Of a DNA stretch of 64,000 nucleotides, positions 1 to 56,878 are shown piece by piece. The stretch is from assembly GCA_964247055.1 (NCBI GenBank), contig OZ176057.1, positions 992,001 to 1,056,000 of the forward strand. Reading direction: 5' to 3'. The first letter of the stretch is position 1. Each line of letters opens with the position of its first letter. Below the pieces are notes generated by a model that searched no databases, had not been told where the DNA came from, and saw only the letters and a list, made by a program, of their open reading frames with translations. The stretch comes from Paragordius varius (lineage: Eukaryota; Animalia; Nematomorpha). The position numbers were made by a program, and so were the translations under genes.

Positions 1-172
1 TAAAAATAATAAAATAAATTATGCAAACATTATGGTTAAATCCAAATTTAAAGATTTTAAGGACCAACTAGAAATGTTTAAGGGCCAACTTGAATTGTTC
101 AGGGCACTTGAAGTGCAAATGGTTTAATTTACATAAAGATTAAATAAAAATATCGGATGCGATTATCTAAGA

Positions 173-2573
173 CAGTGATACTCAAACCGCGGCCCGCGGG
201 CCGCATGCGGCCCTAAGAGTGCTTTAAAATTGCCCTATGGCCATAATGATACTTATTTTTTTTATTGATGAATTTTTAAAATTCACATAATCGGATTTTC
301 GCTTATTTCAATATTAATTTATTTTATTTAGATTTAATTTTGGCAATTTTTATTTTTACCCAATATAAAATGTAAAAAATTTCCCTACATTTAGATGATT
401 TAAATTTGGCCGTTGTTTTGGTTTCTGCATTCTATTTTCTTTTATATTTTAAAATTGTCGCATTCCTTTTTTGTATTTAAGCATTTTCACCCAAACTTAC
501 ATATATATCTTTTCATAGCTATCCTGCATCATTTTTTATAACTCATTCCCATAAAATATTTTTCAAATCAACATCATTAAATTTCGACCTATTTTTTATA
601 GCATAATGCAAATTTTATTCCTTTTTTTGAAAAATGTACCATAATGTTTTAACATAAATTTAAAGGATGACATCTAATGCTGAAAAACGTAAATTATCCG
701 ATGAAAATCGCTCTTTTTAAAAAGAAGAATGGAAATTCTTGTCGTTTTAAATAAAAATGTTACCTGCCTTATATATATTAAGACAACATAATTATAAAAA
801 TACAATATTGAAAGACATCAATCCATCATTAAGAATCAAAAAATATAAGAAGATTAAGAAATTATACCAGAAAGAAAAATCTATTAGCCCATAGCTTTCT
901 TCCAGTAAAAAGCTTTAACATTAGCTCGTATGAAATTTGCTATATTATAGGAAAAAATATGAAACCGTTTACTGATTTCCAACTAATAAAAGAATGTCTA
1001 ATAAAGGTTGCTTATTTAATTTGATAAATTTCATAGTAACATTAGATCATGAGGTAAATTAAAATACTTCAACTTTCTGATTCAACATGTACTCGACACA
1101 TTGAGGATATGTCTAAATTTATTTACAATACATTATTGGCTGTAAAAAACTGCAAATATTTTAGTATTGCTATTGATTCCAGCACTGATATTAGTTCAGC
1201 GCCTCAGCGTACGCTCATGTGAGATTTTGCATCGACAACATAAACAATGAGGAATATTTATAAAATTTTCCAATTAATAATACGACAAAGAGAGTGATTT
1301 TCTCGAAATAATTAGCACTTTTTTCTATAATAATGATATATCTATAAAAAAATTGGTTATAATCTGAACAGATGGCTGTTCCTCTATGATTGGAATAAAC
1401 AAATGATTTATTTCTCTTTTGAAAAACAAATATAATTTGCAAAATATTTTATCCTTTCACTGCTTTAATCATCAGCAAAACCTGGTTTTGCGTGTAAATG
1501 AATACTCAATTCAGTAATTAAAACGATTGTGGATATAGTTAACCACATCCATGGCAGAGAATTCAACCGCCGTAAATTCAAAAACCTTCTGAAAGATATC
1601 CCCAGTGTGTTTGATGATATTCTTTTGTATACCGGTGTCAGATGATTAAGCCTCAGTTAAATATAAGACATGAAATAATATTTCTAAATGATAACAGAAA
1701 GTATGATGAGGATATCAAAAGTGACAAATTGTGGGTTAACTACACATTACTTATAAACTTAGTATCTTAAATACACTTCAGGAGCAAAATAATAACCAAA
1801 TCTAATCAAATATTTGATGAAGTTTATAAATAAAACACTCCTATATTTTCGAACACTTAAAACAATTCCTGAAGATAATATAAAATTTACCGCGGAAATT
1901 AAGTTAATAATAAGCAATCATTTAACATTTTTATCTAATGAGATGAAATTCAGATTTAAAGAATTAAGAAATATTAAAAATTGCTCAAAACTCGTTGAAA
2001 ATCCATGGCATATGGATATATCCAATATTAAACAACTTGAGCATTTCGGTTTTGATCAGGCGCATATCATTGGAGAATTCGTAGATTTTAAATATTCCAA
2101 TTTGGAGGCTATATTCAAGGATAATCGTAGAGAAGAAAGATATGTAGAGTTTTTGCAAGATGTGCCAAATAAATATTAAAATATAAAAAAATATGCTCAA
2201 GTTATCCTAACTGTTTTTCCCTAACTTACACGTTTGAGACGGCATATCAAGAATACATACAGAAATCGCTTAACCGATGATCATATGGACGACGTATTAA
2301 GATTGGATTGTCATGAGGCAAAACCAAATTTGTCAAAAATTATTGGTAATATCAAAAATACTGTTGTTATCAAAATATTTTTTAAACTAAATGGTGCAAA
2401 ACGAGTTTTTAGCTGGATTACATCAGCAAAAATATCATTGTGCTGATATTAAGTATAAATATGTGACATAATTGTCAAATAGCTATGGGATATTTGCCAT
2501 TATAAGGTTCATGGCTCTTGAAAAAAAAATATATTTTATTTGGCCCGTCAAATTTTTTTGGTGAGTACCACTG
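173..2573 (+). mobile_element. Defective hAT DNA transposon (Charlie/Buster/SPIN-like), copy A
   Basis: Ends CAGTGATACTCA... and ...TGAGTACCACTG; perfect 8-bp TSD ATCTAAGA at 165-172 and 2574-2581; subterminal GCGGCCCGCGGGCCGCATGCGGCCC; frameshifted transposase remnants (FSIAIDSSTD, HGREFNRRKFKNLL, RNRLTDDHMDDVLRL). Confidence 0.88.
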
Positions 2574-2599
2574 ATCTAAGATATCACGAATAAAATTGA

Positions 2600-3510
2600 T
2601 GGGATATGAATAATTCAAACATTAGGCCACCCATGTAATTAGGTTTTAATTAAGCGCATTTTGTTAATAACTGTATCGATTTTGCAATTGATTCCAATTT
2701 AAAAGCTATCAATAATTATACAACATTGCAAAGAGGAAAGGAGGAATTTTGGCAAAATTTACCATTATTTAGAGAGTGCTTAATTATCCTTACTTTTCCC
2801 TTTCAGCGTGCAAATTCAAAGCGGCACATTGTAAAAATATGTTAAAAATACATATTAAAATCGGGTAGATGCTCATACCTACTAATTATATCGATTCTCA
2901 AAATTTCTTCATATAGTAATTGTTATTTGAGTATTATAAAAATATTTTCTTATCAAATTATGGCCTAAGACGCGTTTTAGCTATGATATACAGGCAAACC
3001 TCAAAATCCTCACTGTATTCGATTATAAATATTGTATATGTAACTAATTGTCTGCAATATTTACCGGTATTATATAATGCAGAAAACTTGCAAATATTTT
3101 TCGTCCCTTTGAAATTTTTTGGTCAGTATTATTAGGATCTCAATATATCCGCATTTAAATAATCTGCCGTTTAACGAGGAAAGATAAAGTGAAGAATTTA
3201 TATATGGGAGGATATACAAAAATTAAACTGATAAAAAAAACTTACGCCTATGTTACATGGTTAAAACATATTTAAAGAAGCTATATTAATTTTATTGATG
3301 AAAAGATAAAATATTGGATAGTAAGAGGGGAGAAGAGGGCACCCTAAAACACAATGGATAGATGCGGTCAAAAGAGATAAGGCAAAACTAAAATTAAAAC
3401 ACGAAGAGACTCCATGGATAGCGTTATATGGCAGCTCAAAAGAGTTATAAATACAATTAAAATCATTGTCAAAATTTACTTAAAATTTGCTCTACCATGA
3501 ACCCCCACTA
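2600..3510 (+). mobile_element. Highly decayed 3' fragment of a non-LTR retrotransposon
   Basis: Frameshifted C-terminal RTE-like motifs (W..HI.R; KRGRG.PK.QWIDAVKRD-like at about 3320-3385). Boundaries approximate. Confidence 0.4.
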
Positions 3511-6054
3511 AATATATATTATATTATAAGTTGATTATTATTGTTCTTGTAAATATAATTAAGATCCGCAGCGGTCAGTGAGAATTTGTTACATTTTATC
3601 AGAGTTTGATTGATATCAACATGCATAGCCTTGCAGCCAATATAATCATTGCAGTAATATGGTGAACACTCAATATTATCATGTCCAGGACACAGTTGAA
3701 GGGCACATGGATCGCAAATTCTTGTATAAATAGGGCCTTTCCCGCAACTTATGGCGTCCGAAACGTTAAACTACAAAAAATAAATTGAAAATACAGTGTG
3801 AGTAAAAATTGAAATTTCAATATAGAAACAGAATGTAAAAACTAAAAAACAAGTAGGCAGTTATATTACATAAACCTTATAATGTAACTACAGTAAAAAT
3901 TGAAAAACTGACAAAATGAGAAATTATCATACAAATGTTTTGAACAAACAGACAAAATATAGTATTACAGTAATTGAAATTATACGGACAAAATGTGAAA
4001 ATATATAGACATATTTTTATCGAACAAACAACCATATTTTTTGAATGTTGATTTTTTTTATTATAACTCGTTTTAAACTGCAAAGTATGCAAATTCTTGC
4101 ACGGCCTTTCCACATATGGCGTCCGAAACGTTAAACTTCAAAAAATGAAATTAAATTACTGTATGAGTAAAATTAAAATTACATATAGAGATGAAAAAAT
4201 AAAAGACAAGGAGGCAATTATATTTTATAACCTTATAAAATATTTAGAGTAAAAATTGAAATTAAGACAAATATTCTACTAACAGACAAAACTTTTTAAA
4301 TAATTGATTTTTTTAATTATAACTTGCTGTTTTAAATTGCAAAGTAAAACTTGTTGTTTTAAATTGCAAATTAAAACTTGTTGTTTTAAATTGCAAAGTA
4401 TAAGATAGTAATATGAATTGATAACACAATCAATTATGATTTTACGATTAGAATTAAATTTTTTTATATGGTAAATTAAAATTTAAAAAGGTTTGGTTAT
4501 CTTTTGAAAAGAAAATTGTTTTTATAATTTTACATTTCCGTATAATTTTAATTTTTACTGTAAAAATTGAAATTACGGTATGTAAAAATTAATATTGCTA
4601 TACAAAAAAATATTTTCAAAACTGTATGTGTAAATGTGCAAAAAATAAAATTAAAAAAATATTTAAAAAATAATTTAATCCGACGTACCATTTTTAGAGA
4701 GGGTCTTGTCTGGATACCATAGATACTAGATGATGATAATAATTTTTTATTACAGAAATTATTAAATATATAAAATTAAAATTATACAGATTAAGCATCT
4801 AAAGGACAAATTTTTAAAGGTAATCTACTTTTGCACACCTTAATGTTTCTAACAAATATGATTAAAAAATATATATATGAGTGTAGTAAAATTACAGCCC
4901 CTATCATGAAACCCAAAAATGATCTTTTATATTAAAATCAAAATTTTACAGTCAGTTTTTTATACTTTATTATTCAAAATTCATACTGTATTATTTAAAT
5001 TTAATTTACCATAAAATTATAAGGATCCAAGGAATATATAACTTAGACATCATTATCGCAAACTTTAAAATAATTAAAGAAAAAACGAAAAATTAGAAAT
5101 TTAAAGGGTTATTTATATTAACTCAATAAAAGCTGATGTAATTTTTTATCATTATTTTCGCTTTAAGTTTATTGAGATGAGTAATATATTAGCTTCACAT
5201 TATACTTGTAATACATTATGTAACAATGTAATACAATTAGTAAGATTAAACCATGTTACATTTTACAGGTATTTTTGATATTCGTAAAAATTTGTTGTTA
5301 TTTTTAAATTTTTATCACACGATTGTAATTTTATATAAATATCCAGTTGGGATATATTTTATTAGCTTAAATTTTGAAATATAATTTATACTTTAGCTAT
5401 TTTCGTTTAAATATATGTATATTAAAATTAGTTATAATTTTTAAAATGTTTCCTAAGTTGGAAAATAACAAAATTGACTCTTAAATCTCTTAGATTTTTT
5501 TCACATATTTTTCCAATACTTTCCTTATACATCTCTACATTATTAATTAGCCATCAATTTATTTAAAATTCTTTTAATAAGGTAGTTTTTTACTTGGTTT
5601 AAAACAAAACATTTTATAAAGACTATATGATATTTCATCATCTTAAGTAATCTTTATGTCAAAAATATATTTTTAAATCATGTAAAATTTAAAAATATAT
5701 ATGTTCATCCCATTTTTTAGCCGCCAAAATAATGTGGATTTATTAATTATTTAAAATTTTTTGGCAAAATAATTAACCTAAATGGTTTTAATTATCTTAT
5801 GATAACACTTGAATCGCTTTTTACTAGTTTAAATCAATTGTTTGTTCTAGTTTTTGTATTATCTTAATTTTGAAGTCTAGAACATTAATACTCAGACCGC
5901 GGCCTTAAAAATATTTTATGGCCCTAAAAAATTAATTAGTATTTTCTATACTTATTTAGAATGAAAGTCTGATAATTTGTTTTGTGATCCTTGAAACAAG
6001 AAAAAAAGTTTTTGGCCATTTAAATTTTTTTTCATAAGAACCAATGGTATAAAA

Positions 6055-7677
6055 CAGTGGTACTCACCAAAAAAATTTGAGGGGCCAAATAATATATATT
6101 TTTTTTTCGAGGGCCATGAACCTGAATATGGCAAATATTCCATAGCTATTTGAAATATGCACATATTTAACTCTAAATCCGCACAATGAACTAAAAACGC
6201 GTTTTGCACCATTTAGTTTAAAAAATTTAAATATTTTAATAACATTTATTTTGAACTAATAATTTTTGACATATTCGGTTACGCCTCATGACAGGCCAAT
6301 CTTAACATGTCGTCCATTTGATTCGGTTAAGCGATTTATGTATGTATTCTTGACATATTCCATTTTTGAATATGCCGTCTCACTCGTGTAAGTTGAGGGG
6401 AAAACAGTTAGGATAACTTGAGCACATTTTTTATATTTTTATATTTATTTGGCACATCTTGCCAAAACCCACATCTTTCTTCGCTACGATTTCCTTGAAT
6501 GACTATTAGAATAATTTTCAGAATCTATAAATTCTATTATATGCGCCTATCAAAACCGAAATATTAAAGTTGCTTACTATTGGATATATCCACATGCCAT
6601 GACAACGAGTTATAAGGAATTTTTAAATATTTCTTTCTCGAAATTTGAACTCATTTGATATAAATGTTAAATGACTGTCTGTTATGGGTTATTATATTGC
6701 TCCCTTGAAGACTTGTATTTTAGTAATGTCGCAAAGGTAGAGAAGTTGTTTTAAACGGAGGTTAAATTCTCTGCCACGGATGTGGTTAACTCTATCTACG
6801 TTTTAGTTACTGAATTGGGTAATTCATCTTTTACACGCGAAACCAAGTTTTGCTAATGAATAAAGCAGGGAAAGGATAAAATATTTTGCAAATTATTTTG
6901 TTTTTTCAAAGACGAATAAATTCTTTGTTTATTCCAATCATAGGGGGACAGCCATCTGTGCAGATCGAAACCAATTTCATAGATATACCATTATTATCGT
7001 AAAAAGTTCTAATTATTTCAAGAAAATCGATTTCTTTCGTGTATTCTTCATTGGTAAAAATTTTAAATATTCCTCCTTGATTATGTTGTCCTTACATATG
7101 AGGCAAACAACATTTTTATTTAAAACGGCAAAAATCTTTCTTCCCATTCTTTTATAAAGCGGATAATTTACGTTTTTTGCCATTAGATGTCATCCTTTGA
7201 ATTTATGTTTAAATATTATGTAAATTCTTTCAAAAAAATAGGAATGTAATTAAATTATGCTATAAAAAAACAGGTCGAAATTTAATGATCTTGATTTGAA
7301 AAATATTTCATGGGCATAAGTTATTAAAAATGATGCAGGATAGCAATGAAAATATATGGAAGTTTGGGTGAAAGGCTTGCTTAAAAACAAAAAGGAATGG
7401 AATTAAAATTTCAAAATAGAAAAGGAAATAGAATACAGAGAAACAACGTATGCCAAAATTTTGAAATCATTTTAATGTAGGGAAATTTTTCTACATTATT
7501 GGGTAAAAAATAAAACAAAATTAATTTTAAAGAAAATAAATAAATAATAAAATAAGCGAAAATTTGTTTATGTGTACATCAATAAAAAATAATTTAAGTA
7601 TCAATATGGTCATAGGGCAATTTTAAAGCACTCTTAGGGCCGCATGCGGCCCGCGGGCCGCGGTTTGAGTATCACTG
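6055..7677 (-). mobile_element. Defective hAT transposon, copy B (internally deleted, inverted relative to copy A)
   Basis: Same ends as copy A; 8-bp TSD GTATAAAA at 6047-6054 and 7678-7685; colinear reverse-complement similarity to copy A. Confidence 0.88.
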
Positions 7678-7855
7678 GTATAAAACTTACTAAATCTAAA
7701 AGTATAATACCTTTTACATATTTTGTTAGGGATATAAAACTTTGGATTTTTTAATTTAAAATATATTTTCAACAAACAGATAGTTATAACTCTTACATGG
7801 AATTGCGGGTATTTTTATCTATTACTTCTCGAAATTTTAAATAAATTTCTATTAA

Positions 7856-9935
7856 CACTTGGATACAACACACTCCTTTTAGTCCTTCGATTCAAATTGG
7901 TTGGGGTAGTTGGATACCCCGGGCCTGTTTAATATCAAATACTTTAAAAAGTATGGAAGGAATAGAAACCATGGCAAAATTTTACACTTAAATAACATTA
8001 ATAAAGCAAAATATATAAAAAATTTTATTCAATATTTTAAGCTAAAACCGAAAGTTCGTCAACTGACATGTGTCAAATTGTAAAGTTAAAAAATAACACA
8101 AAATAAACCGCTTTTTCTATTTTCTATCAATGTTAGATGAAATTTATATAAAAAATTAGCTTTAGTTTTACACTTAAATTTAAATGAAGACGATATTTTG
8201 CAAAATATTGTACAATAAAAATGGCGACGAAGTAGTTTGAGATGGAACGTTTTTTTCAACACAAAATTTTATCAAGATATTTTGGCATATTTATATATTT
8301 TTATCAGGATAGAAGCATAAATTTAAATTGAGACCGTTTCCTTCAGTAGTTTTTAAAAATATAAATTTAAATTTAGCCTGGGGTATTTAAATACCTCAAT
8401 TTGAATCGAAGTGTTAAAATATTCTTTAAGTTATGATTGTTTTATTTACTTAAATTATTTTATTGCGTATTATTATTTAGAAGGTATTTCAATACAAAGC
8501 TTTTATTGTACAAAACCGGAGTGCAAAAAACATCTAATATAATATAAAAACATCATAAGGATTCTCATTATGTGTTTGGTTTTGGCGCCTTATGAAGCAT
8601 TATATTTTGGTTTTTGTGGTAATTTCTCCAGATAGGGTCTCATGTATTATCTTCATATCTAGATTTACACATGTCGTGTATACAAACTTTTTACCTTTGG
8701 GTTACCTTAACACTCACATACAACACATTCATTTGTCTTACGATACAAATTGGAGTAGCTGGATACCCCAGGCCTGTTTAAAATTAATTACTTTAAAAAA
8801 TATGGAAGGAATCAATAACATGGCAAATTTTTTCACTTATATAACAATAATAAACCAAAAAACTTGATTTAAAAATACTTTATCTTACTTATTTTAGGGA
8901 AAAACCCAAAACGTGACATGTGGCATTGGCTAAATTAAAAATAATACAAAATAAACCACTTTTTTTATTTCTATAAATGCTATATATGTTTTAGATTAAA
9001 AAACTAGCTTTAATTAAACCTTTCATAATATAAATGAATACGATATTTTGCGAGAATTTTGCAAAATTAAAATGGCGTTGAAGTAGTTTGACATGAAACT
9101 TTTTTTCAAAACGAATTTTTATTTAAATATTTTAGCTATTATATATTTATTTGGATAGAAACATCAATTTAAATTGGGACCGTTTTCCTTGTAGTTTTTA
9201 AAAAATATTAAATAAAATTTAGTCTGGGGTATTTAGATACCCCAATTGGAATCGAAGTGTTAAAATAAGTAATATCAAATATTTTTGAATAAATTTTATA
9301 TATTTCGGTTTACTGTTATACAAGTGCAACCTTTTGCTATGATTTCGATTTCCATATATTTAGAAGTAATAAAATACAACAAATTCATTTTAGTGCTTCG
9401 ATTCAAATTGGGGTAATTGGATTAGGCCTGTTTAATCTTTAAAAAATATGGAATGTATCAAAACCATGGCAAAATTTTGCATTTATATAACAATAATAAA
9501 CCGAAATATATAATATTCAAAAATACTGATTTTACTTATTTTAAGCTAAAACCCAGAGGTAAAAATTTAGTCAACGTGACATGTCGGCAATTTAAAAATT
9601 TTAAAATAATACAGTATAAAACACTTTTTATATTTTCATTATTGGTAAATTTAATTTATATTAAAAATTAGCTTTAATTTTACCAAATTAAGTGAAGACG
9701 ATATTTTGCAAAAATTTTGTAAAAAAATGGCATCCAATTCGTTTGACATGGAACTTTTATTTCAAAAAGAAATTTTGTTTCGATATTTTGACTTATTTAT
9801 ATAATTTTATAAGAATAGAAGCACTGGGGTATTAAGATACCACAATTTTCGAAGTGTTAATTTATAAACAGGCTTGGGATATCCAACTACCCCAAATTAA
9901 ATCGAATGATTGAATGTCTCAGATCCAAGTGTTAT
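7856..9935. mobile_element. Cluster of about 560-bp TTAA-flanked MITEs: three head-to-tail copies (about 7856-8418, 8707-9265, 9372-9860) plus an inverted partial copy (about 9868-9935)
   Basis: TTAA|CAC...GTG|TTAA ends; shared GGGGTAGTTGGATACCCC and GGGGTATTTARATACC subterminal blocks. Another inverted copy lies at about 55278-55790. Confidence 0.7.
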
Positions 9936-10031
9936 CTTTTCACATGTTTTTCACATGGCAATTGCTTTGCTTTTTAAAATTTTCGAAATGTTTTAAATTT
10001 TTTTAATCGTTACCTTTTGTTTAACATTTTA

Positions 10032-10580
10032 ATGAGTAATAAATCTGACGATGGAACTAAGCCGCCATTAGACACATCTCAACGAAATTATTTAGCGACA
10101 ACATTGGAGAATGGTTACAGATTTGTGCTTGGAAGTATTGCTGGGGCTACGGGGGCAGCCGCCGTATATCCATTTGATATGGTAAAAACAAGATTACAAA
10201 ATCAAACAAGAAAATTATCTAAGTCAAAATTATCACACACGTCTGATCACATAGTGAAGACAAAACAATCTGGCTCTACCATTACAAAAAATAATATTCA
10301 TACAGGGATTATTGAATATAAAATACCATTTCAACATACTCATAAATTACATACTTCTTTACCACATTCTCAAATTAAGGCCTCTTATCAATATCTCACT
10401 TTCCCTAGGCAATACTGTAGTCCAACGTCAGATTTAGCATGTAAACATTCCAAAACATACTATCTAAATTCTTGGGACTGTTTCAAAAAAATTCTTAAAT
10501 ATGAAGGCATTCGAGGACTTTATAGGGGCTTAGGACCTCAATTGGTCGGAGTCGCACCCGAAAAAGCCATCAAATTAACT
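10032..10580 (+). CDS. Aralar-like carrier exon 1 (MSNKSDD...PEKAIKLT)
   Basis: ATG at 10032, in-frame TAA upstream at 9975, donor GTAAGT at 10581. Confidence 0.88.
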
Positions 10581-13500
10581 GTAAGTTTTTGTAGTAAATA
10601 CTAATATTAGATCAAAGTCCAGTTTAAACTGAGGACATAGTGAAGCGATAATAATTTCGCAAAAACTCGATTAATACATGGGTATAAATTTTATAACTAG
10701 TTCATTATATTTGTTTAAGTACCAAAAAATTAATCGAAAAGCTATCTAATTAGCACAAGTTTATTACAGTTTTAGTCCAGTTACAACTGGAATTTACCTT
10801 TAAAATATTTCAAAATCATTCACCCAAAATTTAAATTCCCCCTCGAACAATTCAAATTTACCCTAAAAATAAATTGAGTTTTCAGGATAATATAACTTAT
10901 CATTAATTTGCAATAGTTTACGATATGGCTTATTATTTTTTCAGCATTATATTAGTTTTAAACAGAATTTCATATTTAAACATAAAATAAAAGTAATTTC
11001 TAATCTTAAAAAACACATAATTTATTTTAAAGTGAATTTGAATTGTTCGAGGGATGATTTTGAATCGTTCAAGGGTGAATTTGAATTCTTTAAGGGTAAA
11101 CTTAAACTGTAAATGGTATATATAAAGACTCTAGTGTTAGAAAATTTTTGAGTGTTTAAATACCAAATTTGGGCTCTTTTATAATAAAGAATATCTGCAA
11201 AAAAAGTTAACTTTATATATTACATACTTTGTTGCGCTAATTGTTTTTTTAGTCCAAAATTTACATTTCCAAACATAAGAAACCGGTCAAAATTGGATTA
11301 TTATAATAAACATTTATTATTTAGGAAAAATAATTTACAGTATGCATTTTAATGGTTGCTTATTTCACAATGGGCAATTCGCAACACAAGAGTGTATGTA
11401 TGAAAAAAAACAACAAAATGTTGATTAACTGTTATTTTCCTTTCTTCTTTTTTCCATACTACACTACTGTGTTGCAAATTGCCCTCAACTATAGTGTGAA
11501 TAATAAGCAACCATTATAATGCATACTGTAATATATTTTGTTGAAGTACTTCAAAATTACAGTATAAGTATATATTCCTAGAAAGTTAATTATTGAATAG
11601 CTTTTACAACAAAGGGTGTATTATTGGCTTATAGTTATTTTTACCACTTTTTACTATTATTAGCCAATAATAATTCTCTTTGCTGCATATGTTATTTGGC
11701 AATAATTAATGCTAACTTTCTAGCAATATAAATTACTCATACTGTAAAATTACAATCGAAAAAAAGTTATGTATAAATACAGTAAACTATTTTTATATTT
11801 TACATCTCAAGGCAATTATTGCCCTACTTAGGGTAAAATCAGTTTAATTTTAAACCACAACTATTGAATCAGAAAGTCACAAAATTTAGATTAATGTATA
11901 TATATCTATAGCCAGTTTAATAATGAAAAAAAAACTTTAAATTTGTATTTGACGAATATATATAGTAATCTATATATATATATATATATATATATATCAA
12001 ATAAAATTAACTTGAAATTTGAAATTGTATCGATTTGAAAACTTGTGTGGTCAGTATAAAATATTTCAAGGCTAATTTATGGATTATTTGTTGTTATAGT
12101 CAAATAAAAGAATATAATTATATAACTCAATAAACAATTTTTATTACAATTGTATCTAATTTATAATTTAAATGATTAAATGATTTGATCAATTTAAGTA
12201 AATTTTAAACAAATATATATCAATCAAACAATCACAATGTGTTTGTTTTTCGTCTTTCTTTTGTCACACTCATCGTGAAATATATATATTTTTCAAGTTT
12301 AAAATGTTGAATATTCGCCAATACTTTACAGTATATATAATAATATAAAACATTTCAAAATTGGTTAGAATATATAGTTAATATTTAACATTTATTGCTC
12401 TTTGGGGTACTCTTATGTTAGGTGGGAATCAAAATTAGCCATGTTTATTTATTCAAACTGTAATGTTTTAGTTAACAGACCTGGGTCTGTTATTTGATAT
12501 TATATATCCTTTTATCCAATTAAACCATTTCAAAATGACCAATCCTAGGTAACATTACACTACTGTACTGGGGAAAGATATTACCCTTCATAAACCGTAA
12601 AAATATAAAATTTAAATTAGGTCCAGTAACCCTTTGAGACTTTATGTGCGGCCCGCAAAAAATCTAAATATCTGTGATTTGTGAAAAATATCTTTCATAA
12701 AATCTTAGAACAATTTTTCCTAAGAATTTTGTTTATTCGATCGATTAGTACAAAGTAAAATAAATTGTTATGTTGTATTTGAATTTTATAGTCTATGACA
12801 GTTATGAATCAATTATATTATCAAAAAAAATTCTGTTAAATGGGTGGGGTCTAAATATTTAGTAAAGAATGGAAAAACAAGAGCTCTATAGTAATTGATA
12901 TACTTTTTTGATGAATATATATTGTTAATACCATAGAGCTCTTGTTTTTTCCACATTCTTTACCAAATATAGCCCTCATTTAACGAAAAAAAAAAATAAA
13001 TAAATTTTTGATAAAAGGATACATGACTGTATTATTGGCTCAAAATAATAGTAAAAAGTGAAAAAATAACTATAAGCCAATAATACTGCCCTTTGACTTG
13101 TCTATGCTATTTGGCAATAATTAATCACTTTCTAGCAATGTATACTTACTCATACTGTAATATCTTTATATATACCATTTATACTTCGAATTCACCCTTG
13201 AACAATTTAAATTCATCCTTGAACAATTCAAATTCATCCTACAATAAATTATGTGTTTTTTAAGATTAGTATAGTTTTAAATAAAGAAATTTTGTATGTA
13301 ATCAACATAATACTGAAAAACAATAATAAACTTTGCCATAAAAATATATTTAATTCGAATGATGAGTTAATTATATTAAACCGAAATTTCATAATACATT
13401 TTTAGGGGGAATTTGAATTGTTCAGGGGGGTGAATTTGAATTATTCAAGGGTGAATTTGAATTGTTTAAGGGTAAATTTGAATTGTTCAAGGGGGTGATT

Positions 13501-14702
13501 TTGAATTGTTCAAGGGTGACAAATTTGAATTGTTTAAGGGTGAATTTGAATTGTTTAATGGTGAATTTGAATTGTTCAAGGGTGAATTTGAATTGTTCAA
13601 GGGTGATAGGGAATTGTTTAATGGTGAATTTGAATTGTGTAAAGGTAAATTTAAATAATGGTGAATTTGAATTGTTTAAAGGTAAATTTAAATTGTTCAA
13701 TGGTGAATTTGAATTGTTCAAGGGTAAATTTGAATTGTTCAAGGGTGAAAAATTTGAATTGTTTAATTTTCAATTTGAATTGTTTAAGGGAGAAATTGAT
13801 TATTCAAGGGTGAATTTGAACTGTTTAAGGGTGCATTTTGAATTATTCAAGGGTGAATTTAAATTGTTTAAGGATGAATTCAAATTGTTCAAGAGTGAAA
13901 AATTTGAATTGTAAATGATATATTACTTTAGGTAAATGATTTTGTGAAAGATGAATTTGGATACGTTTATGGAAAACTTCCGATATGGACTGAAATCGTT
14001 GCGGGCGGATGCGTAAATATTTTTATATATATCTTTTTACTTTTTTTGTTTGACAAATAATTTACAATTTTTTATATTTTTGAACAACACTAATTTATTT
14101 AGTTTAGTTGCGAATTAAATATCTTTTCACCTTTTTTATTTAGCAAATAATTTACAGTTTTTTTTAATTTTGAAAAATAAAGAAGTTTTTATAATATTTT
14201 TTTGAAAAACACTAAAAATTTGTCTAGTTCAATTATATATATAGTAAAATTTTTATATCTTTTTATTTTTTTGTTTATAGCAAATAATTTACAGTTTTTT
14301 TAATATAGACAAAAAACTTTAAAAAATTACCTAGTATTTAGATACGAATATATATGGGAGTAAAATTAGTATTTTGCCCGGGCGCAGTTTGAATTCTTTG
14401 AACCATAAAATACAATATTATTTTAAATATATATATATATATATATATATTACCATTTATAATTAAAATTTATTCTTGGATATTTTTATATCTTGAATAT
14501 TTTAAATATAAATCATTGTTTGAAATGGTAGAGTATGTGTTACAGAGATGTATATTACTAACACAATCAATTAATTTTATATATTGGAATAATATGGGAA
14601 ACATTATTAAGGTTTAAAAAAGTAAGGGCTTGTTTATTAGATAAAAAAATTTGTCTTTATATTTTTACGTTTTGTCATTCCGTAAAATTTCAATTTTTAC
14701 TC

Positions 14703-14740
<38 letters not shown>

Positions 14741-15380
14741 ATCTATATAGGCCGGAGCAAGTCAAGTCATATTTACGAATCCTATGGAAATTGTCAAAAT
14801 ACGATTACAAGTGGCGAATTTAGCGACACTTGTCATGAAAGAACAACATCAATCAAATCAAAATGATTTGAATGTCACTAAAAATGTTTCAGAACAAAAA
14901 TGCAATAATTCAATCAATAAGTCGAATGGTGATAGCTCTAAAATGATTAATAAATACAACCATACAACTACTGATAAAAGTATAAAATTTATATTATATT
15001 GATTCAAAAATTATATAAATTTATCATAAATTTTCGATTACTACAAGTAATCTAGCATTTTTTACGTTTGACAAAGATTACTTGTAAAAATCGAAAATTC
15101 ATAATAAATTTATATAATTTTAGCTGAATTATAATTGCAATATATCAGTTATTTATATCATATTATTGATTCAAAATGTTTTTATTTAAATATACCCATT
15201 TACACGTCAAATTTACCCTTAAACACTTCAAATTATCTTTTTGGATTTAAAGATCTATTTACATTCTTAAATATTCTACCAGTCTACTTAGACATATTAT
15301 TAATTAATTATATAACGAGTTATATAATATATTTAAGTGCTTGTTAATGCATATAAATACACTCTTAGCAGTCAATTTAT

Positions 15381-15424
<44 letters not shown>

Positions 15425-15703
15425 ATATACTATTTACAATAATTCTCCCTCAAATAAATTAAATGTTTTATAAGATTTAAAATTACCTATATTTCAATAT
15501 ATTTTAAAAAAATTTCCTTTAAAATTATAATAATACTAAAAAAATAATAAACATGCCTTTAAAGATATATTTCATATTAATAATGAGTTAAATTGGTTTG
15601 AAAACACATATTATATTTTTAGGGTGAATTCGAATTGTTCGAGGGTGAATTTGAATTGTTCGAGGGTGAATTGAATTGCTTAAGGGTGAATATCAACTGT
15701 AAA

Positions 15704-15755
<52 letters not shown>

Positions 15756-18700
15756 TAAAATTAAGTAAAATAACCCAGTGTAATAAGTGTGACTTTGTCT
15801 CAGGGTTTTTAACTGTTAATAAACGAACTTGGCATTTCATAAAAGTTGTTTTTAATCAAATGTCAATGTAAATGTGACAAATTCTTTTAGTTTTTAAAGT
15901 TTTCATAGTTTATTACTTTTTTCCCAAATTTATTTTTTAAAACCCACCTACAAATAATATGTGTAATTTAATGTGATAGATCCAAATTGTAATGGTTATA
16001 ACTTAAAAATGTTGGACTATTTATTAATTCATTTCAAAATTGGAAAAATTTTACGATAATCATCACTCAATAGTTTATGGGTGCTCTTTTTATAATTACA
16101 GTAATTGACATTATACCGACAAAACCTAATAACACCTTGACAAATGTTTTTTTTCTTTAAAAGACAACCCTTTAAACCTTATTACAGTAAAAATTAAAAA
16201 TTATACGGACAAAACGTAAAAATATAAAGACAAATATTTTTTAAGCTAAAAGACAATCATTTTTACATCTTGATTTATTTTACATATAAATAATGGATTT
16301 AATGGCAAAGTGTGAAATAGATATATATATATTACTAATACAATCTTTCTTGTAACTAAATAACATAAAAATTAAGGTTATAAAAAAGTATGGTTGTCTT
16401 TTAAATAAAATATTTGTCATTATATATTTACTTTTTGTATGTTTTATAATTTACATATTTTTACTGTATATTTTAAATTTATTATGTAAAAATTATTTTT
16501 TTAGAAAACATTCCGAAAACCGCTGTGCCTAAAAAATCTGCCATTTCCATTGTTCGGGAACTGGGTCTTAAAGGACTTTATACAGTATAAATTTATATTT
16601 ATTTTTTTACAAATTTTTTTTAAACATAATCCAAATTGAGTTATTATTAATCATATGTTCCAAAAAAATACATGCAAAGCATGTGTTTTTTATCCCAGGA
16701 TTTTATCCATATAAATCAAATATATGGTGGTTAAAATTTTTTTGATTCGATTTGTATAATAATAAATACATATGTATATATTTGAATTAAAATAGAGCGT
16801 TTTTGCAACAAAAAATCATATTATTATTATTCATATTTGTTTACTTATTACTGTAAAAATTAAAAATTAATATATCATTTACACTTCAAATCCCTTGTAC
16901 GATTGAAATTCACCCTAAAATAAATTATGTGTTTTTAAAGATTAAATATTACTTATATTTTTTGATATTTTAAATATGAGATTTCTTTTGTAAATAAAAT
17001 AATACTGAAAAAATAATAAACTAAGCCATAAAGATATATTCCATATGAATAATAAGTTATATTAGCTCGAAAACACATAATTGTTTTTTTAGGGTGAATT
17101 TGAATTTTCAGGGGTGAATTTGAATTGTAAATGGTATATAGTATAGACAAAATATAAAAACTAAAGGACAAATAATATTTTATAATAGATCATACTTTTT
17201 TAAACTTTCTTGATTTAATTAAATATAACTCAAAAATTAACAATAGAGATTTAAATTGGGATTACGCCTAATTATTAATTGATAAATTTTTGTATTATGA
17301 TTAAGTTTATATGGGAAAATTCAGGGTATAAAAAAGCTGTAGTTGTCCTTTAAAGAAAAATATTTGTCTTTATAATTTAAATTTAAAAAATATAGTTTTT
17401 TTACAAAAAATATTATTATTTGCTTTTTTATTCTACTTTTTTTTAATAATTTAAATATTTTAGGGTTCAAGTGCCTGTTTTTTACGGGATATTCCCTTCA
17501 GTGCCATCTATTTTCCCACATATGCTCATCTCAAATTTTATTTTAATGATAATTATTTCACCTCAACCTATAATAATAATCAAACCGAATCTGATAAAGG
17601 TCATTTATAATACATTTGGAAAAATTTTATAAAACTTTTTTTGATTTTTCTTTTACCATTGTTCAAATTCACCCTAAAAATAAATTATATGTTTTTGAAC
17701 TAATATAACTCATTATAAATATGAAATGTATCTTTATAACATAGTTTATTTATATTTTTTCATTATTATTGTAATTTAAAACAAAATTTTTATTTTTGTG
17801 ATTTTTAATCTTAAAAAATATATATCTTGTTTGAGGGTGATTTTAATTATTTAAGGGTGATTTTAATTGTTTAAGGGTGAATTTGAATCGTAAATTTTTA
17901 TATGGTATATCGTTTCCTTTATGCTAAGTTAACTTATAATACACTTGTAGTTTTTCATTAATTGTTACCAACAAAAAAATAAGAAAAATAATTTTTACTA
18001 ATATATTTCTGTTTTATTGTATAAGTCTCTCAATCTGGAAAATATTTATGAGAAGTCTAGAAATGTATACTTATTAATTTTGTAATTTTATTCTTATACT
18101 TTTTATGTTTTGTTTTTTTTTCTTCCAAAATTTTGATATTAAATTGTAATAATTTTTTTAATAACCAATAAAAACCAACCTATAACCAATAATATAGCTG
18201 TTAACTATGTTAAAATACAAAAGATATACATGATATTAGGTAACAAATTTTTTTTTACCAGTTCAAATAAACATTAAGATAAACCTAACATAATTATTAT
18301 AAAAAATTAAATATTGCTAGACATAGAACTTAAAGATGCGGCATATATGTAGAACCTCTTGGAAATCCAAGATTAAACCTTAACTTAGCTCATTATTGAA
18401 AAGTTTGACAGTTTAATAATTTATAATATTTAAAATTTATAAAGAGAGCCAATTTTTACCAGATATGTTAGTATCTTTGAAATAACCGATATTAAGCGTA
18501 AAAGACAAAAATACGAAGTGCTTTTCCAAAACAAAACTCATATTACTTCGGATGTAGTAAAAACCACATATATATATATATATATATAGGGTATTTTATA
18601 TGAAAAAAATAGTATTTTTCCATATATCATCTATCATATTCTCTAATAATTAATAGAAAGACACACCTAACCAACACTTAACCAACAAAACATTTAATCA

Positions 18701-19875
18701 ATTAATTAAAAGATTCATATATAACTAAAATTATTTCTTCTCTAATAACCAATAAAAAGACACACTTAAACAACATAATATTTAATAAATTAAATAACTA
18801 AAATCATTTTTTTAAAAAAACTTATTTTTATTTTATTTACATATAGATGTCCGAATAAATCCGTGGGCCATGTTATGGGCTGCTACATTAGCAGGGGTCC
18901 CTGCAGCGGCCTTAGTAACCCCGGCAGATGTTATAAAGACTAGACTTCAAGTTGAAAGGTAAGTGCTTAAAAAAATTTATGAATCAGTTTAAGAGTTTTA
19001 TTTATAAAGAAGAAAGGTAAGTTATATTCAAATTTTTAATTGATAAATACCAAAAAAAGGTTAAAATTAAAGTAAAACTGTACAGGGATTACAATTATAC
19101 ACATGAAACGTAAAACAAAAGGTAGATATCTTTTTTTTATTAAAAGATTGCTGTATTTTTAACTTATTTTTTTCAGATAAACTTTATGTTTTGAATTGGG
19201 AAGAAATTGCAAAGAAGTATGTAAATTGGTACCATAATCGATTGTATATTTTACGATTGAAGTTTAAAATATTAAGGATATGTCTTTAATTTATTTTTTG
19301 TCCTTATAATATTAATTTTAACTGTATGGTGATAGGTTAAAGAAGTATAAGTTTAAGAGTTTAACCAAATATTTTTCTGGATTTTTTCAAAAATGTACCT
19401 AACATTAGGAATTTCGAATGGCATTTTACTTTTTTTAAAAGTGCTGTGGTATTTCATACCCCATTACGCTAATGGCATATAAATGAGTTAGGGTGCGCAT
19501 TAGGATAGTTTTTTGAAAAGATTTTATTATTATTAATATTACTATTGTGATCTATTATAAAAAGTCATTTAAATTTTATTTCTTGATTGTTATGGCTTAT
19601 TAATGAGTACTATGAAGTTTGTGGCAATGTTTTTACTCAATGTTAATTTTATATAAAAACCAGGCTAAAAAATATGCAAATTAGAAATCACGATAATCGA
19701 TATCAATTTATTTAATTTTATCCTATATATTATTAAATATCATGAAATGTGTTATAATAAGTAGACAGACTGTATATCATTTTTTTTTCTTATACATTGG
19801 AAATATCGCCAAATAATAATTTGCAAAATATTCTTATTTTTGGTTTTTATGCTCTCTAAAATGATTTATTTTCCC

Positions 19876-19925
<50 letters not shown>

Positions 19926-21170
19926 TTGTGGCAGTTATGTTTTACAGTTAAAAATGTAATTATACAAACAAAGTGTAATGTTTAAAGGCAAATATTTTTC
20001 TGAAAATGATAACCATATTTATTTAAACCTTGATTGTTTTATACCTAAATTCGTTTATTGCATTATAGAAAAGAGAGTGATATATAAGTAGACATTGCTA
20101 GAAAGTTATTAATTATTGTCAAATATTGCACACAACAAAGGACAGTATTATTGGCTTATAGTTATTTTTTTCACTTTTTACTATTATTATAAACCAATAA
20201 TAATTCTCCTTGCTGCATATGCTATTTGGCAATAATTAATAACTTTCTACCAATAATATACACTTACTCATATTGTAATTCATTAAAATGCTTAAATAGT
20301 TTACACGTGAAAGTTTCAGGGTTTAAATTGGTATGGTTGTATTTTTTGTAAAATTCTTTAGTTTTTGCATTTTGCCTGTATAATTATGACTTTTTCATAA
20401 ATTAATTGCTACAAAATTTAAATTAATCAATTATTTACTTTCATTTTATACTGACTGCATATAGAAAAGGGGCTCATCAAGCTCAAATTCCTAGCCATAT
20501 GAGAGATTGTAAGGGTATTTCTGATACTTGTATGGCTATCCTTAAACACGAAGGCTTTCCTGCCCTTTGGAAAGGAACACTGGGTAACTTTTATGAGAAC
20601 TAAATTTTGTTGTCGTTTTAAACGTCGTAAAACTTGGTTAGTTTCTTGTGGTTTTTTTTAAAACCATCAGTTACAGTTATAACTATCTAGCTTGACTGCT
20701 AATGATATATTCGGGGTGTTTCTGAGTTATTTGCGCTTGTTTTTTTAGAGTAAAAGTAAATTTTTTAAATTAGCAAATTAGTTTATAATACAGTGAAAAT
20801 TGAAAGTATACGGAGAAACCAAAACACATTAGGGCATATATCTTTCAAAAGACAACCATAATTTTCCATTGATTTTCCCAATAAATTAAATTTCAATTGT
20901 ATTATAATTTATTGTGTTACCAATTTATACATCTCTATTTTATACTTTGAAAATTAAAACAATAAATTATATTAAAAAAGTATTGTCTTTATTTTTTACC
21001 ATATTTGCCTTTGGTATAATATCAATTTTTATTTCAAAATTGATATTAAAAATTTTAATACATATTATTTATCTTTTTTAGCTCGCGTATGCCGGAGTTC
21101 TCCTCAATTCGGTGTTACCTTGTTAACCTACGAACTTCTTCAAAATATGTTTGATATCAAATTTGTTTGA
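10032..21170 (+). CDS. SLC25A12/SLC25A13-like (aralar): Mitochondrial aspartate/glutamate carrier (aralar/citrin type), carrier domain only; join(10032..10580,13932..14012,14751..14979,16505..16584,17464..17599,18847..18958,20465..20583,21082..21170), 464 aa
   Basis: Three carrier signature motifs ([30 protein letters not shown]). Aralar-type segments [45 protein letters not shown] and [21 protein letters not shown]. All 7 introns are GT-AG with matching phases; total 1395 nt ending TGA at 21168-21170. Confidence 0.93.
11338..11528. mobile_element. Palindromic MITE TA|CAGTATGCATTTTAATGGTTGC...GCATACTG|TA (Tc1/mariner-type ends)
   Basis: Long TIR, TA flanks; copies at about 31260-31432, 36035-36220, 48160-48335, 59452-59864, 60745-60863. 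Confidence 0.8.
13173..13920. mobile_element. Foldback MITE family A (TA|CCATTTAC...GTAAATGG|TA) with one arm expanded into about 24 copies of the 21-bp unit TTGAATTGTTCAAGGGTGAAT
   Basis: Terminal inverted repeats; array about 13400-13915. Other copies at about 10831-11118, 15429-15708, 16872-17137, 17655-17900, 28862-29150, 29250-29500, 30286-30570, 42998-43308, 46910-47345, 47335-47585, 52428-52715, 61630-61866, 62102-62388, 62999-63270. Confidence 0.85.
13932..14012 (+). CDS. Aralar-like carrier exon 2 ([27 protein letters not shown])
   Basis: TTTAG acceptor, GTAAAT donor, 81 nt, phase 0-0. Confidence 0.9.
14751..14979 (+). CDS. Aralar-like carrier exon 3 ([21 protein letters not shown] plus Asn/Ser-rich loop)
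   Basis: TATAG acceptor after (TA)n, GTATAA donor; phase 1 fits exon 4. Confidence 0.85.
16185..16466. mobile_element. MITE TA|CAGTAAAAATTGAAATTATACGGAC...TTTTTACTG|TA
   Basis: TIR with TA flanks; related copies at about 3890-4620, 19079-19324, 20790-21030, 22190-22410, 33100-33412, 48633-48882, 52850-52979. Confidence 0.75.
16505..16584 (+). CDS. Aralar-like carrier exon 4 ([26 protein letters not shown])
   Basis: TTTAG acceptor, GTATAA donor. Confidence 0.88.
17464..17599 (+). CDS. Aralar-like carrier exon 5 ([24 protein letters not shown]...)
   Basis: TTTAG acceptor; GTCATT donor in phase 1 fits exon 6. Confidence 0.85.
18847..18958 (+). CDS. Aralar-like carrier exon 6 ([36 protein letters not shown])
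   Basis: ATAG acceptor, GTAAGT donor. Confidence 0.9.
20465..20583 (+). CDS. Aralar-like carrier exon 7 ([39 protein letters not shown])
   Basis: ATAG acceptor, GTAACT donor. Confidence 0.88.
21082..21170 (+). CDS. Aralar-like carrier exon 8 ([29 protein letters not shown])
   Basis: TTTTAG acceptor, TGA stop. Confidence 0.9.
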
Positions 21171-56407: not shown

Positions 56408-56878
56408 ATGATGACCACAACTTCAATTCTCGATTCCACAGCGGAAACTAATTCTGGAGAAAACATATCAAATGATACGGATATAAATTCAAAAGTTACA
56501 TGCTCTGAAACTGGCCAGGATATAATTGCTTTAAAAACCAACAAAGTTTCGCCTGTAATTAACAATGTTGCTATTGATGAATTTTATGATGGTAAACTTG
56601 ATTTTAAACAGTCGTCGTCTGCTCCCAATCAAACTCCAAAAAGAACAAGACCAAACGATAATTTACCGGATGATAACGAAAAATTAAATGGCGGAAAAAG
56701 GTTAAAAAAATCAAAGTTGGATTCGCAGGAAGCAAATTGTGATGACGATAAATCAACAAACCAAGGTACAGAAAATATTGATTCAGTGGATAGTGGCAGT
56801 TTTACCAAATTTGACCCGAAAAGCAAGCTTACAACCATTGAAAACAAGGTTGATTTTATCGAAACAGGTGTTAATAAG
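56408..56878 (+). CDS. RBFOX-like first coding exon (low-complexity N-terminus)
   Basis: 157 open codons, GTATGT donor, phase 0 matches the next exon. Confidence 0.75.

What the first reader, a model, noticed from the sequence alone, without database searches (positions are those of the whole stretch)
10032..21170. Aralar/citrin-type aspartate-glutamate carrier apparently stripped of its whole Ca2+-sensing apparatus
Seen: the carrier domain is clearly aralar-type rather than GC1/SLC25A22-type, and keeps the substrate contact points (EKAIK, LRD, RSS, TYE). The ORF starts about 30 aa before helix 1; there is an in-frame TAA at 9975 and no AG between it and the ATG. The preceding 10 kb is transposon debris with no recognisable EF-hand exon, and the protein stops at FDIKFV*. 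Established: animal AGCs carry about 300 aa of N-terminal EF-hands and a C-terminal amphipathic helix after the carrier domain that packs against the EF-hand domain. Inference: loss of both partner modules suggests a real calcium-independent malate-aspartate shuttle carrier rather than an annotation gap.
Basis: partly seen in the sequence, partly recalled or inferred. Interest (0 to 1): 0.7.

Follow-up and report, generated by a model that had tools for sequence, protein, structure and literature searches.

The report
Aspartate-glutamate carrier without calcium-binding domain
This worm genome's only aspartate-glutamate mitochondrial carrier gene encodes just the transport domain, without the calcium-binding head and tail helix that other animals have, and a second horsehair worm has the same short form, so the loss is very probably real.

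Summary
Window 10032-21170 (+) carries an eight-exon, all GT-AG gene for a 434-464 aa mitochondrial carrier. A tree puts it inside the aspartate/glutamate carrier (AGC) clade and outside the glutamate carriers. Every residue that citrin needs for substrate binding and for its salt-bridge networks is kept.

The protein starts about 28 residues before helix 1. An in-frame TAA lies at 9975, with no AG between it and the ATG. The protein ends 8 residues after the YELLQ motif.

The nearest public relative is the Gordionus (horsehair worm) gene, 70% identical over 287 kept alignment columns. Two annotation pipelines give it a similarly placed start, also with a stop just upstream, and RefSeq isoform X2 ends at the same point. 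It has no EF-hands.

A profile of 16 animal AGC N-domains detects even the Pfam-invisible N-domain of Intoshia exon by exon. It finds only calmodulin-type and penta-EF-hand genes in this 110 Mb genome, and nothing in the 50 kb upstream. The genome has no second AGC locus and the window has no C-terminal helix motif.

"Calcium-independent" remains inference, and published work on citrin already questions calcium gating by this domain. Verdict: real domain loss and a new variant of a known family, annotated automatically in Gordionus but undescribed. Interest is moderate.

The parts
9975..9977 (+). In-frame TAA upstream of the start codon; no AG between it and the ATG
   Evidence: Sequence read directly. 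The Gordionus locus has the same arrangement, with a TAA 3 codons before its ATG.
10032..10580 (+). Exon 1: start codon, about 28-residue N-terminal tail, helix 1, an 85-residue matrix-loop insertion, the h12 helix, and helix 2 with contact point I (EK of APEKAIKLT); donor ACT|gtaagt
   Evidence: (Mito_carr E 3.5e-24)
10206..10460 (+). Lineage-specific insertion in matrix loop 1, 85 codons with no stop. Gordionus has a 46-residue insertion at the same place.
   Evidence: Stays open in only 0.2% of shuffles. Alignment. The equivalent Gordionus loop is low-confidence and probably disordered in the model.
13932..14012 (+). Exon 2: end of helix 2 (VNDFVKD) to the start of helix 3 (AGGC)
14751..14928 (+). 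Exon 3: helix 3 with [10 protein letters not shown], then a second insertion. Alternative in-frame donor at 14979.
16505..16584 (+). Exon 4: h34 matrix helix ([16 protein letters not shown])
17464..17599 (+). Exon 5: helix 4 with contact point II (FLRD) and YAHLK
18847..18958 (+). Exon 6: helix 5 with [10 protein letters not shown]
20465..20583 (+). Exon 7: h56 matrix helix (EGFPALWKG). Alternative in-frame acceptors at 20495 and 20504.
21082..21170 (+). Exon 8: helix 6 with contact point III (R of CRSSPQFG), TYELLQ, then 8 residues and TGA. No C-terminal amphipathic helix.
   Evidence: The C-terminal-domain profile finds nothing in the window.
7901..9895 (.). Three copies of a dispersed repeat unit of about 850 bp, with inverted ends, abutting the gene. 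The last copy ends 137 bp before the ATG.
170..7680 (.). Two inverted copies of a dispersed repeat, each about 2.4 kb and 80-95% complementary, around a 3.5 kb centre

Best explanation
This is the single AGC (SLC25A12/13-type) ortholog of the genome. By its nearest relative, and by earlier unchecked scan notes, the genome is a horsehair worm's. The gene has lost the roughly 300-residue N-terminal eight-EF-hand domain and the C-terminal amphipathic helix, leaving only the six-helix carrier domain plus lineage-specific loop insertions. Shown here: the gene structure, the AGC placement, the intact contact points and salt-bridge motifs, the absence of N- and C-domain coding sequence, and the matching architecture in Gordionus. 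Inferred: it still exchanges aspartate for glutamate plus a proton, because the human citrin carrier domain alone transports. Also inferred: it works as a monomer like ordinary SLC25 carriers, it enters mitochondria without the N-domain, and it cannot bind calcium itself. The truncation most likely predates the split of this species from Gordionus.
For: Gene model: complete ORF over 8 GT-AG exons. Start: stop upstream with no acceptor between. Gordionus: RefSeq X1-X3 and the authors' models all start about 22 residues before helix 1, and X2 ends FDIKY against FDIKFV here. That genome has stranded RNA-seq, which the authors' annotation used. Tree: window and Gordionus are sisters (99/96) inside the AGC clade (95/97), with glutamate carriers outside. 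Residues equivalent to citrin E404, K405, R492, D493, R588, D350, E450, K453, C489, T546, E601, K508 and Y500 are all kept (against PMC11539162). N-domain searches of the whole genome gave nothing with the Intoshia N-domain. They gave only weak EF-hand hits with a 321-aa EF-hand N-domain. A 16-sequence profile hit only a calmodulin-like gene, calmodulin and a penta-EF-hand gene. The 50 kb upstream scored at most 3.3 bits, while the same profile scored 28.1 and 11.3 bits on Intoshia exons. There is no other AGC-type locus and no C-terminal helix motif in 64 kb. The Gordionus ortholog folds as a confident six-helix carrier with low-confidence insertions. The citrin carrier domain alone retains transport (PMC11539162).
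Against: There is no RNA evidence for this species. AG dinucleotides inside exon 1 (10035-36 behind a T-rich tract, 10058-59, 10070-71) could in principle accept an upstream exon. Exon-by-exon profile searches can miss a very diverged, finely split domain. The assembly's completeness is not stated. In the Gordionus record, a Pfam-less 160-aa gene model on the same strand ends 41 nt before the ATG, so transcription through that region is possible. Transport activity, oligomeric state and calcium response are untested.
Confidence: 0.75

Rival explanations
1. Annotation gap: EF-hand exons exist, either further than 50 kb upstream or too diverged to detect, and are spliced into an internal acceptor of exon 1.
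For: Introns in this lineage can be very long, up to 19 kb in the Gordionus ortholog. AGs with T-rich tracts occur just after the ATG. No transcripts were available.
Against: Genome-wide profile and protein searches find no AGC N-domain, while the control on Intoshia works. Two pipelines give the short start in Gordionus; the authors' BRAKER run used RNA-seq. Earlier unchecked scan notes place other genes 10-38 kb upstream. Loss of the C-terminal partner helix fits loss of the N-domain.
Confidence: 0.07
2. A different, non-EF-hand N-terminal extension or targeting peptide is spliced in from an upstream exon. The protein would then be longer than modelled but still lack calcium sites, as yeast Agc1p does.
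For: Possible acceptor at 10036|10037. A Pfam-less same-strand gene model ends 41 nt before the Gordionus ATG. The citrin N-domain is needed for localisation (PMC11539162), so a replacement is conceivable.
Against: The candidate acceptor position is not shared between the two species. The Gordionus upstream ORF looks like non-coding sequence. Ordinary SLC25 carriers need no extension.
Confidence: 0.08
3. A neofunctionalised carrier: it descends from AGC but now moves another substrate or works as a uniporter, with the large loop insertions marking a new role.
For: Long shared branch of the worm pair (0.61) and insertions of 85 and 37 residues in matrix loops. Yeast Agc1p also does uniport (PMC6769469).
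Against: All three contact points and both salt-bridge networks are identical to AGC. It is the only AGC-type gene, so the ancestral role has no other bearer.
Confidence: 0.07
4. A decaying gene or pseudogene whose 5' part was cut off by repeat insertion.
For: Dispersed repeats reach to 137 bp before the ATG.
Against: The frame is intact across 8 exons. The protein is 70% identical to Gordionus over the kept alignment columns, with invariant functional motifs, and the start and stop are similarly placed in both genera.
Confidence: 0.03

Closest known systems
Animal AGC1/aralar (SLC25A12) and AGC2/citrin (SLC25A13)
   Same: The carrier domain is orthologous. It lies inside the AGC clade, the Gordionus ortholog is 50-57% identical to canonical carrier domains, and contact points I-III and the network motifs are identical.
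   Different: It lacks the N-terminal eight-EF-hand domain, which provides dimerisation and calcium binding, and the C-terminal amphipathic helix. It carries lineage-specific loop insertions.
Engineered citrin carrier domain alone (deletions 1-319 and 616-675; Tavoulari et al. 2024, PMC11539162)
   Same: Almost the same boundaries as the natural worm protein. The construct retains transport activity.
   Different: That is a laboratory construct, whereas this is a natural gene conserved in two genera. The paper reports that citrin N-domain mutations impair mitochondrial localisation, which the worm protein must manage without.
Gordionus sp. m RMFG-2023 SLC25A13-like, XP_065313156/159/160 (P0267, P0152, P0151)
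   Same: Ortholog: similarly placed start, same stop position in isoform X2, the same insertion sites, and the shared PFDM motif in helix 1.
   Different: Fewer, longer introns, a 70-residue insertion between helices 4 and 5, and shorter matrix-loop insertions. It carries only an automatic name and no paper discusses it.
Yeast Agc1p
   Same: An AGC without calcium-binding motifs (PMC6769469).
   Different: Agc1p keeps a long N-terminal extension; the worm protein has none.
Glutamate carriers GC1/GC2 (SLC25A22/18)
   Same: Carrier domain only, and the closest sister family.
   Different: The tree puts the worm protein outside the GC clade. It keeps the contact-point arginine that the review says GCs lack.
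Intoshia linei AGC model (P0001, LWCA01000196.1)
   Same: Another fast-evolving, AT-rich parasite with a remodelled AGC locus, including a second carrier unit without an N-domain.
   Different: Its first unit keeps an N-domain. Pfam sees no EF-hand in it, but the AGC N-domain profile does detect it.

Membership tests
AGC (SLC25A12/13-type aspartate/glutamate carrier) | Three Mito_carr repeats forming a six-helix carrier domain | tested here: met
   Pfam hit on exon 1. Exon-wise Mito_carr hits at C8:1002107-1010983. Full alignment. The Gordionus ortholog folds as a six-helix bundle with pTM 0.71.
AGC (SLC25A12/13-type aspartate/glutamate carrier) | Phylogenetic placement with AGCs rather than GC1/2 or other carriers | tested here: met
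   AGC clade 95/97 includes the window and Gordionus pair; the GC clade and others lie outside.
AGC (SLC25A12/13-type aspartate/glutamate carrier) | Contact points EK (H2), RD (H4) and R (H6), plus the matrix and cytoplasmic network motifs | tested here: met
   [42 protein letters not shown] and YELLQ, mapped to the citrin residues listed in PMC11539162.
AGC (SLC25A12/13-type aspartate/glutamate carrier) | N-terminal domain of eight EF-hands (calcium site in EF-hand 2, dimer interface in EF-hands 4-8) | tested here: not met
   Start 28 residues before H1 with a stop upstream. No N-domain in the 50 kb upstream or genome-wide. The control works.
AGC (SLC25A12/13-type aspartate/glutamate carrier) | C-terminal amphipathic helix that binds the N-domain | tested here: not met
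   Stop 8 residues after YELLQ, as in Gordionus X2. No motif in the window or in the Gordionus locus.
AGC (SLC25A12/13-type aspartate/glutamate carrier) | Electrogenic aspartate/glutamate-plus-proton exchange; homodimer | not testable with these tools
   Needs reconstitution and SEC-MALLS.
Glutamate carrier GC1/GC2 (SLC25A22/18) | Clusters with GC sequences | tested here: not met
   The GC clade (85/76), including Phallusia GC1, excludes the worm pair.
Calcium-regulated ATP-Mg/Pi carrier (SCaMC/APC) | Calmodulin-like four-EF-hand domain fused to an ADP/ATP-carrier-like domain | tested here: not met
   An APC-type query (P0147; EF-hand plus Mito_carr by Pfam) matches exon 1 at only 39% identity and 26 bits.

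The most novel reading that the evidence does not exclude
Horsehair worms may have dismantled direct calcium sensing by mitochondrial metabolite carriers altogether. The sole AGC is a bare carrier domain. No EF-hand hit lies within 170 kb of any carrier locus, no SCaMC-type carrier was found, and MCU was not detected. If so, this is a natural animal AGC that is imported and works, presumably as a monomer, without the N-domain that human citrin needs for localisation. That would be a natural test of what the domain is for.
Probability: 0.2. Interest if true: 0.7.

Novelty: new variant of a known kind. Interest (0 to 1): 0.45.

Why it matters
The three-domain, dimeric, calcium-binding architecture is treated as the hallmark of animal AGCs. 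The role of the N-domain is now disputed: calcium gate, or import and dimerisation module (PMC11539162). An animal lineage whose only AGC lacks both accessory domains, with boundaries almost identical to the engineered 'carrier domain alone', gives a ready-made protein for three tests. Is the carrier domain sufficient in vivo? How is it targeted? Can the malate-aspartate shuttle run without direct calcium input? It is also a clear case of domain loss, rather than gene loss, in a phylum known for heavy gene loss. In practice, the short gene models in horsehair-worm annotations should not be 'repaired' as truncated.

Tried and rejected
RNA evidence:
- The look-up of sequencing runs listed five holders of exon 1, none on record as RNA.
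No reads were laid.
- Those places lie in intron 1.

Public proteins:
- No protein of this species is in the collections.
- Origins of other short AGC-like proteins (P0072, P0061) were uninformative.

Candidate N-domain hits elsewhere in the genome, all rejected:
- C2:7520244-7520702 is a 152-aa intronless calmodulin-like gene.
- C1:9690231-9692557 is calmodulin.
- C4:6801443-6801718 is a penta-EF-hand (sorcin/ALG-2-like) gene.

Other checks that led nowhere:
- Pfam found nothing in six upstream ORFs.
- I looked for homology between the worm N-terminal tail and the vertebrate linker 'IAPLEEG'. The multiple alignment was unstable, so no claim is made.
- The MCU search was empty but had no positive control, so it shows nothing firm.

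Handling of the spliced model:
- The spliced protein model was joined only inside run_python, from window coordinates, for local alignment and the tree.
- Database searches were done exon by exon or with the Gordionus protein by id. The search with the joined model was left out.
Full report
**What is there.** The window is G000:C8:992001-1056000 of a 110.5 Mb, roughly 25% GC animal genome. On the + strand between 10032 and 21170 lie eight coding pieces that match aspartate/glutamate carriers (AGC) in order. Enumerating GT/AG pairs that keep the frame gives one consistent model:
- 10032-10580
- 13932-14012
- 14751-14928 (alternative donor 14979)
- 16505-16584
- 17464-17599
- 18847-18958
- 20465-20583 (alternative acceptors 20495 and 20504)
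- 21082-21170

This gives 447 aa, or 434-464 with the alternatives. Exons are 37% GC against 22% for the introns.

The ATG is at 10032, a TAA is in frame at 9975, and there is no AG in between. The frame ends FDIKFV-stop at 21170. The upstream 10 kb consists of dispersed repeats with hundreds to thousands of copies in the genome. Pfam recognises no transposase in it.

**What family it is.** Exon 1 hits Mito_carr at E 3.5e-24. A maximum-likelihood tree was built from 39 carrier domains, with 301 columns kept of 654 and the model LG+C20+F+G4. The window protein and its Gordionus relative are sisters (99/96) inside the AGC clade (95/97). The glutamate-carrier clade, which includes a named GC1, and the other carriers fall outside.

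Tavoulari et al. 2024 (PMC11539162) show or propose which citrin residues are essential. These are contact points E404/K405, R492/D493 and R588, and network or neighbouring positions D350, E450, K453, C489, T546, K508, E601 and Y500. All of them are conserved here. The protein therefore reads as a working AGC carrier domain.

**The missing domains.** The protein begins about 28 residues before helix 1 and ends 8 residues after YELLQ. Canonical animal AGCs continue with about 60 more residues that hold the amphipathic helix.

I searched the whole genome for the N-domain in three ways:
- The Intoshia N-domain gave no hit.
- A 321-residue EF-hand N-domain gave only weak generic EF-hand hits.
- A profile of 16 animal AGC N-domains (A1) gave a best hit of 42 bits.

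The profile hits are a 152-aa intronless calmodulin-like gene, calmodulin itself, and a penta-EF-hand gene.

A maximum-sensitivity hmmsearch covered six-frame fragments of the window's first 22 kb plus the 40 kb upstream of the window, so 50 kb upstream of the ATG. Nothing scored above 3.3 bits.

As a control, the same profile found the N-domain exons of Intoshia linei at 28.1 and 11.3 bits. Pfam itself sees no EF-hand in that N-domain.

A profile of C-terminal domains found nothing in the 64 kb window. A search with an AGC carrier domain found no second AGC-type locus; the next best carrier exon is 35% identical.

**Independent support from a relative.** The best informative public match is from Gordionus sp. 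m RMFG-2023, a horsehair worm. RefSeq isoforms X1-X3 (449, 437 and 360 aa) and the authors' own models (411 and 147 aa) all begin about 22 residues before helix 1. None has an EF-hand. X2 ends FDIKY, one residue from the stop position here.

In the Gordionus DNA, a TAA lies three codons before the ATG with no AG between. Neither profile finds N- or C-domain sequence in the locus, which spans 10 kb upstream, the 39 kb gene and 10 kb downstream. The genome paper reports 127 million stranded RNA-seq reads, which its BRAKER annotation used.

The two worm proteins are 70% identical over 287 of the tree's 301 kept alignment columns. They share derived traits: PFDM in helix 1 and insertions at the same loop positions. 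The truncated architecture therefore probably predates their split and has been maintained under selection.

An AlphaFold model of the Gordionus protein shows a confident six-helix carrier (pTM 0.71; most transmembrane blocks above pLDDT 88). The insertions have low confidence.

**How it most likely works.** This part is inferred. The protein should act as a stand-alone SLC25 carrier that exchanges matrix aspartate for cytosolic glutamate plus a proton. It would be the AGC step of the malate-aspartate shuttle. The human citrin carrier domain alone (deletions 1-319 and 616-675) transports in proteoliposomes. Full-length and carrier-domain-only AGC1 and AGC2 behave alike in earlier work (PMC6769469).

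Without EF-hands 4-8 there is no known dimer interface, so a monomer is expected. Without EF-hand 2 there is no calcium site. What the worm has functionally lost depends on an open question. PMC11539162 reports that calcium bound to the N-domain does not regulate citrin transport, and that N-domain mutations instead impair mitochondrial localisation. On that view the worm protein is a natural case of import without the domain.

**Caveats.**
- There is no transcript evidence for this species. Those places, in intron 1, were sent to no search tool afterwards and were masked in later scripts.
- AGs inside exon 1 (for example 10035-36, behind a T-rich tract) could accept an upstream exon.
- In the Gordionus record, a Pfam-less 160-aa model on the same strand ends 41 nt before the ATG. 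Its last ORF looks non-coding.
- Assembly completeness is not given.
- The identification as a horsehair worm rests on the nearest ortholog and on earlier unchecked scan notes. Published horsehair-worm genomes are 200-300 Mb, larger than this assembly.
- The spliced model was joined only inside scripts for alignment and the tree. The database search with the joined protein was left out; searches were run by exon reference or with the Gordionus protein id.

**Novelty and verdict.** No paper in the library mentions aralar together with Nematomorpha. The Gordionus entries carry only automatic names. Calcium-motif-free AGCs are known in yeast, but Agc1p keeps a long N-terminal extension. Carrier-only relatives exist as the glutamate carriers GC1 and GC2. 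An animal whose only AGC is a bare carrier domain is therefore a new variant of a known family, and not a new kind of system. Interest is moderate.

Noticed in passing
G000 genome-wide: No EF-hand_7 hit lies within about 170 kb of any Mito_carr locus. An EF-hand-bearing SCaMC/APC-type query finds no ortholog. The Pfam MCU family gave no hit, but that search had no positive control. Direct calcium sensing by mitochondrial carriers may be reduced generally in this genome.
   Followed up: partly
L005 (Intoshia linei LWCA01000196.1) 10001-25189: The 979-aa public model joins an aralar-like N-domain (invisible to Pfam, detected by the AGC N-domain profile) to two tandem AGC carrier domains. The second has no N-domain. 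This is probably two tandem genes fused by the predictor.
   Followed up: partly
window 13422-13914: A low-complexity minisatellite in intron 1 gives long open frames on both strands (repeats of NNSNSPL or FELFKGE type). This explains the 165-codon open stretch seen among the introns.
   Followed up: no
window 7901-9895 and 170-7680: A high-copy dispersed repeat of about 520-850 bp with inverted ends sits in three copies directly upstream of the gene. Further upstream, two inverted 2.4 kb copies of another dispersed repeat flank a 3.5 kb centre.
   Followed up: partly
Nothing was laid, and the places were left out of all later searches.
   Followed up: no
window 40815-41643: Two ORFs in opposite orientation share a similar stretch (GGELKRN ... 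[12 protein letters not shown]). The layout resembles endonuclease remnants of a non-LTR retrotransposon, judged by eye only.
   Followed up: no
window 56408-58102: ORFs of a downstream + strand gene. One holds an RNA-recognition-motif start ([14 protein letters not shown]), which looks like an RBFOX-type protein, judged by eye only.
   Followed up: no
L009 (Gordionus OX940783.2) 1-9959 and 47692-47814: A Pfam-less 160-aa same-strand gene model ends 41 nt before the AGC start and may be 5' UTR. RefSeq isoforms X1 and X3 replace helix 6 with an alternative last exon and are unlikely to be functional carriers.
   Followed up: partly
G000:C2:7520244-7520702 (-): An intronless 152-aa calmodulin-like gene with four EF-hands. 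It was the best genome hit of the AGC N-domain profile.
   Followed up: yes
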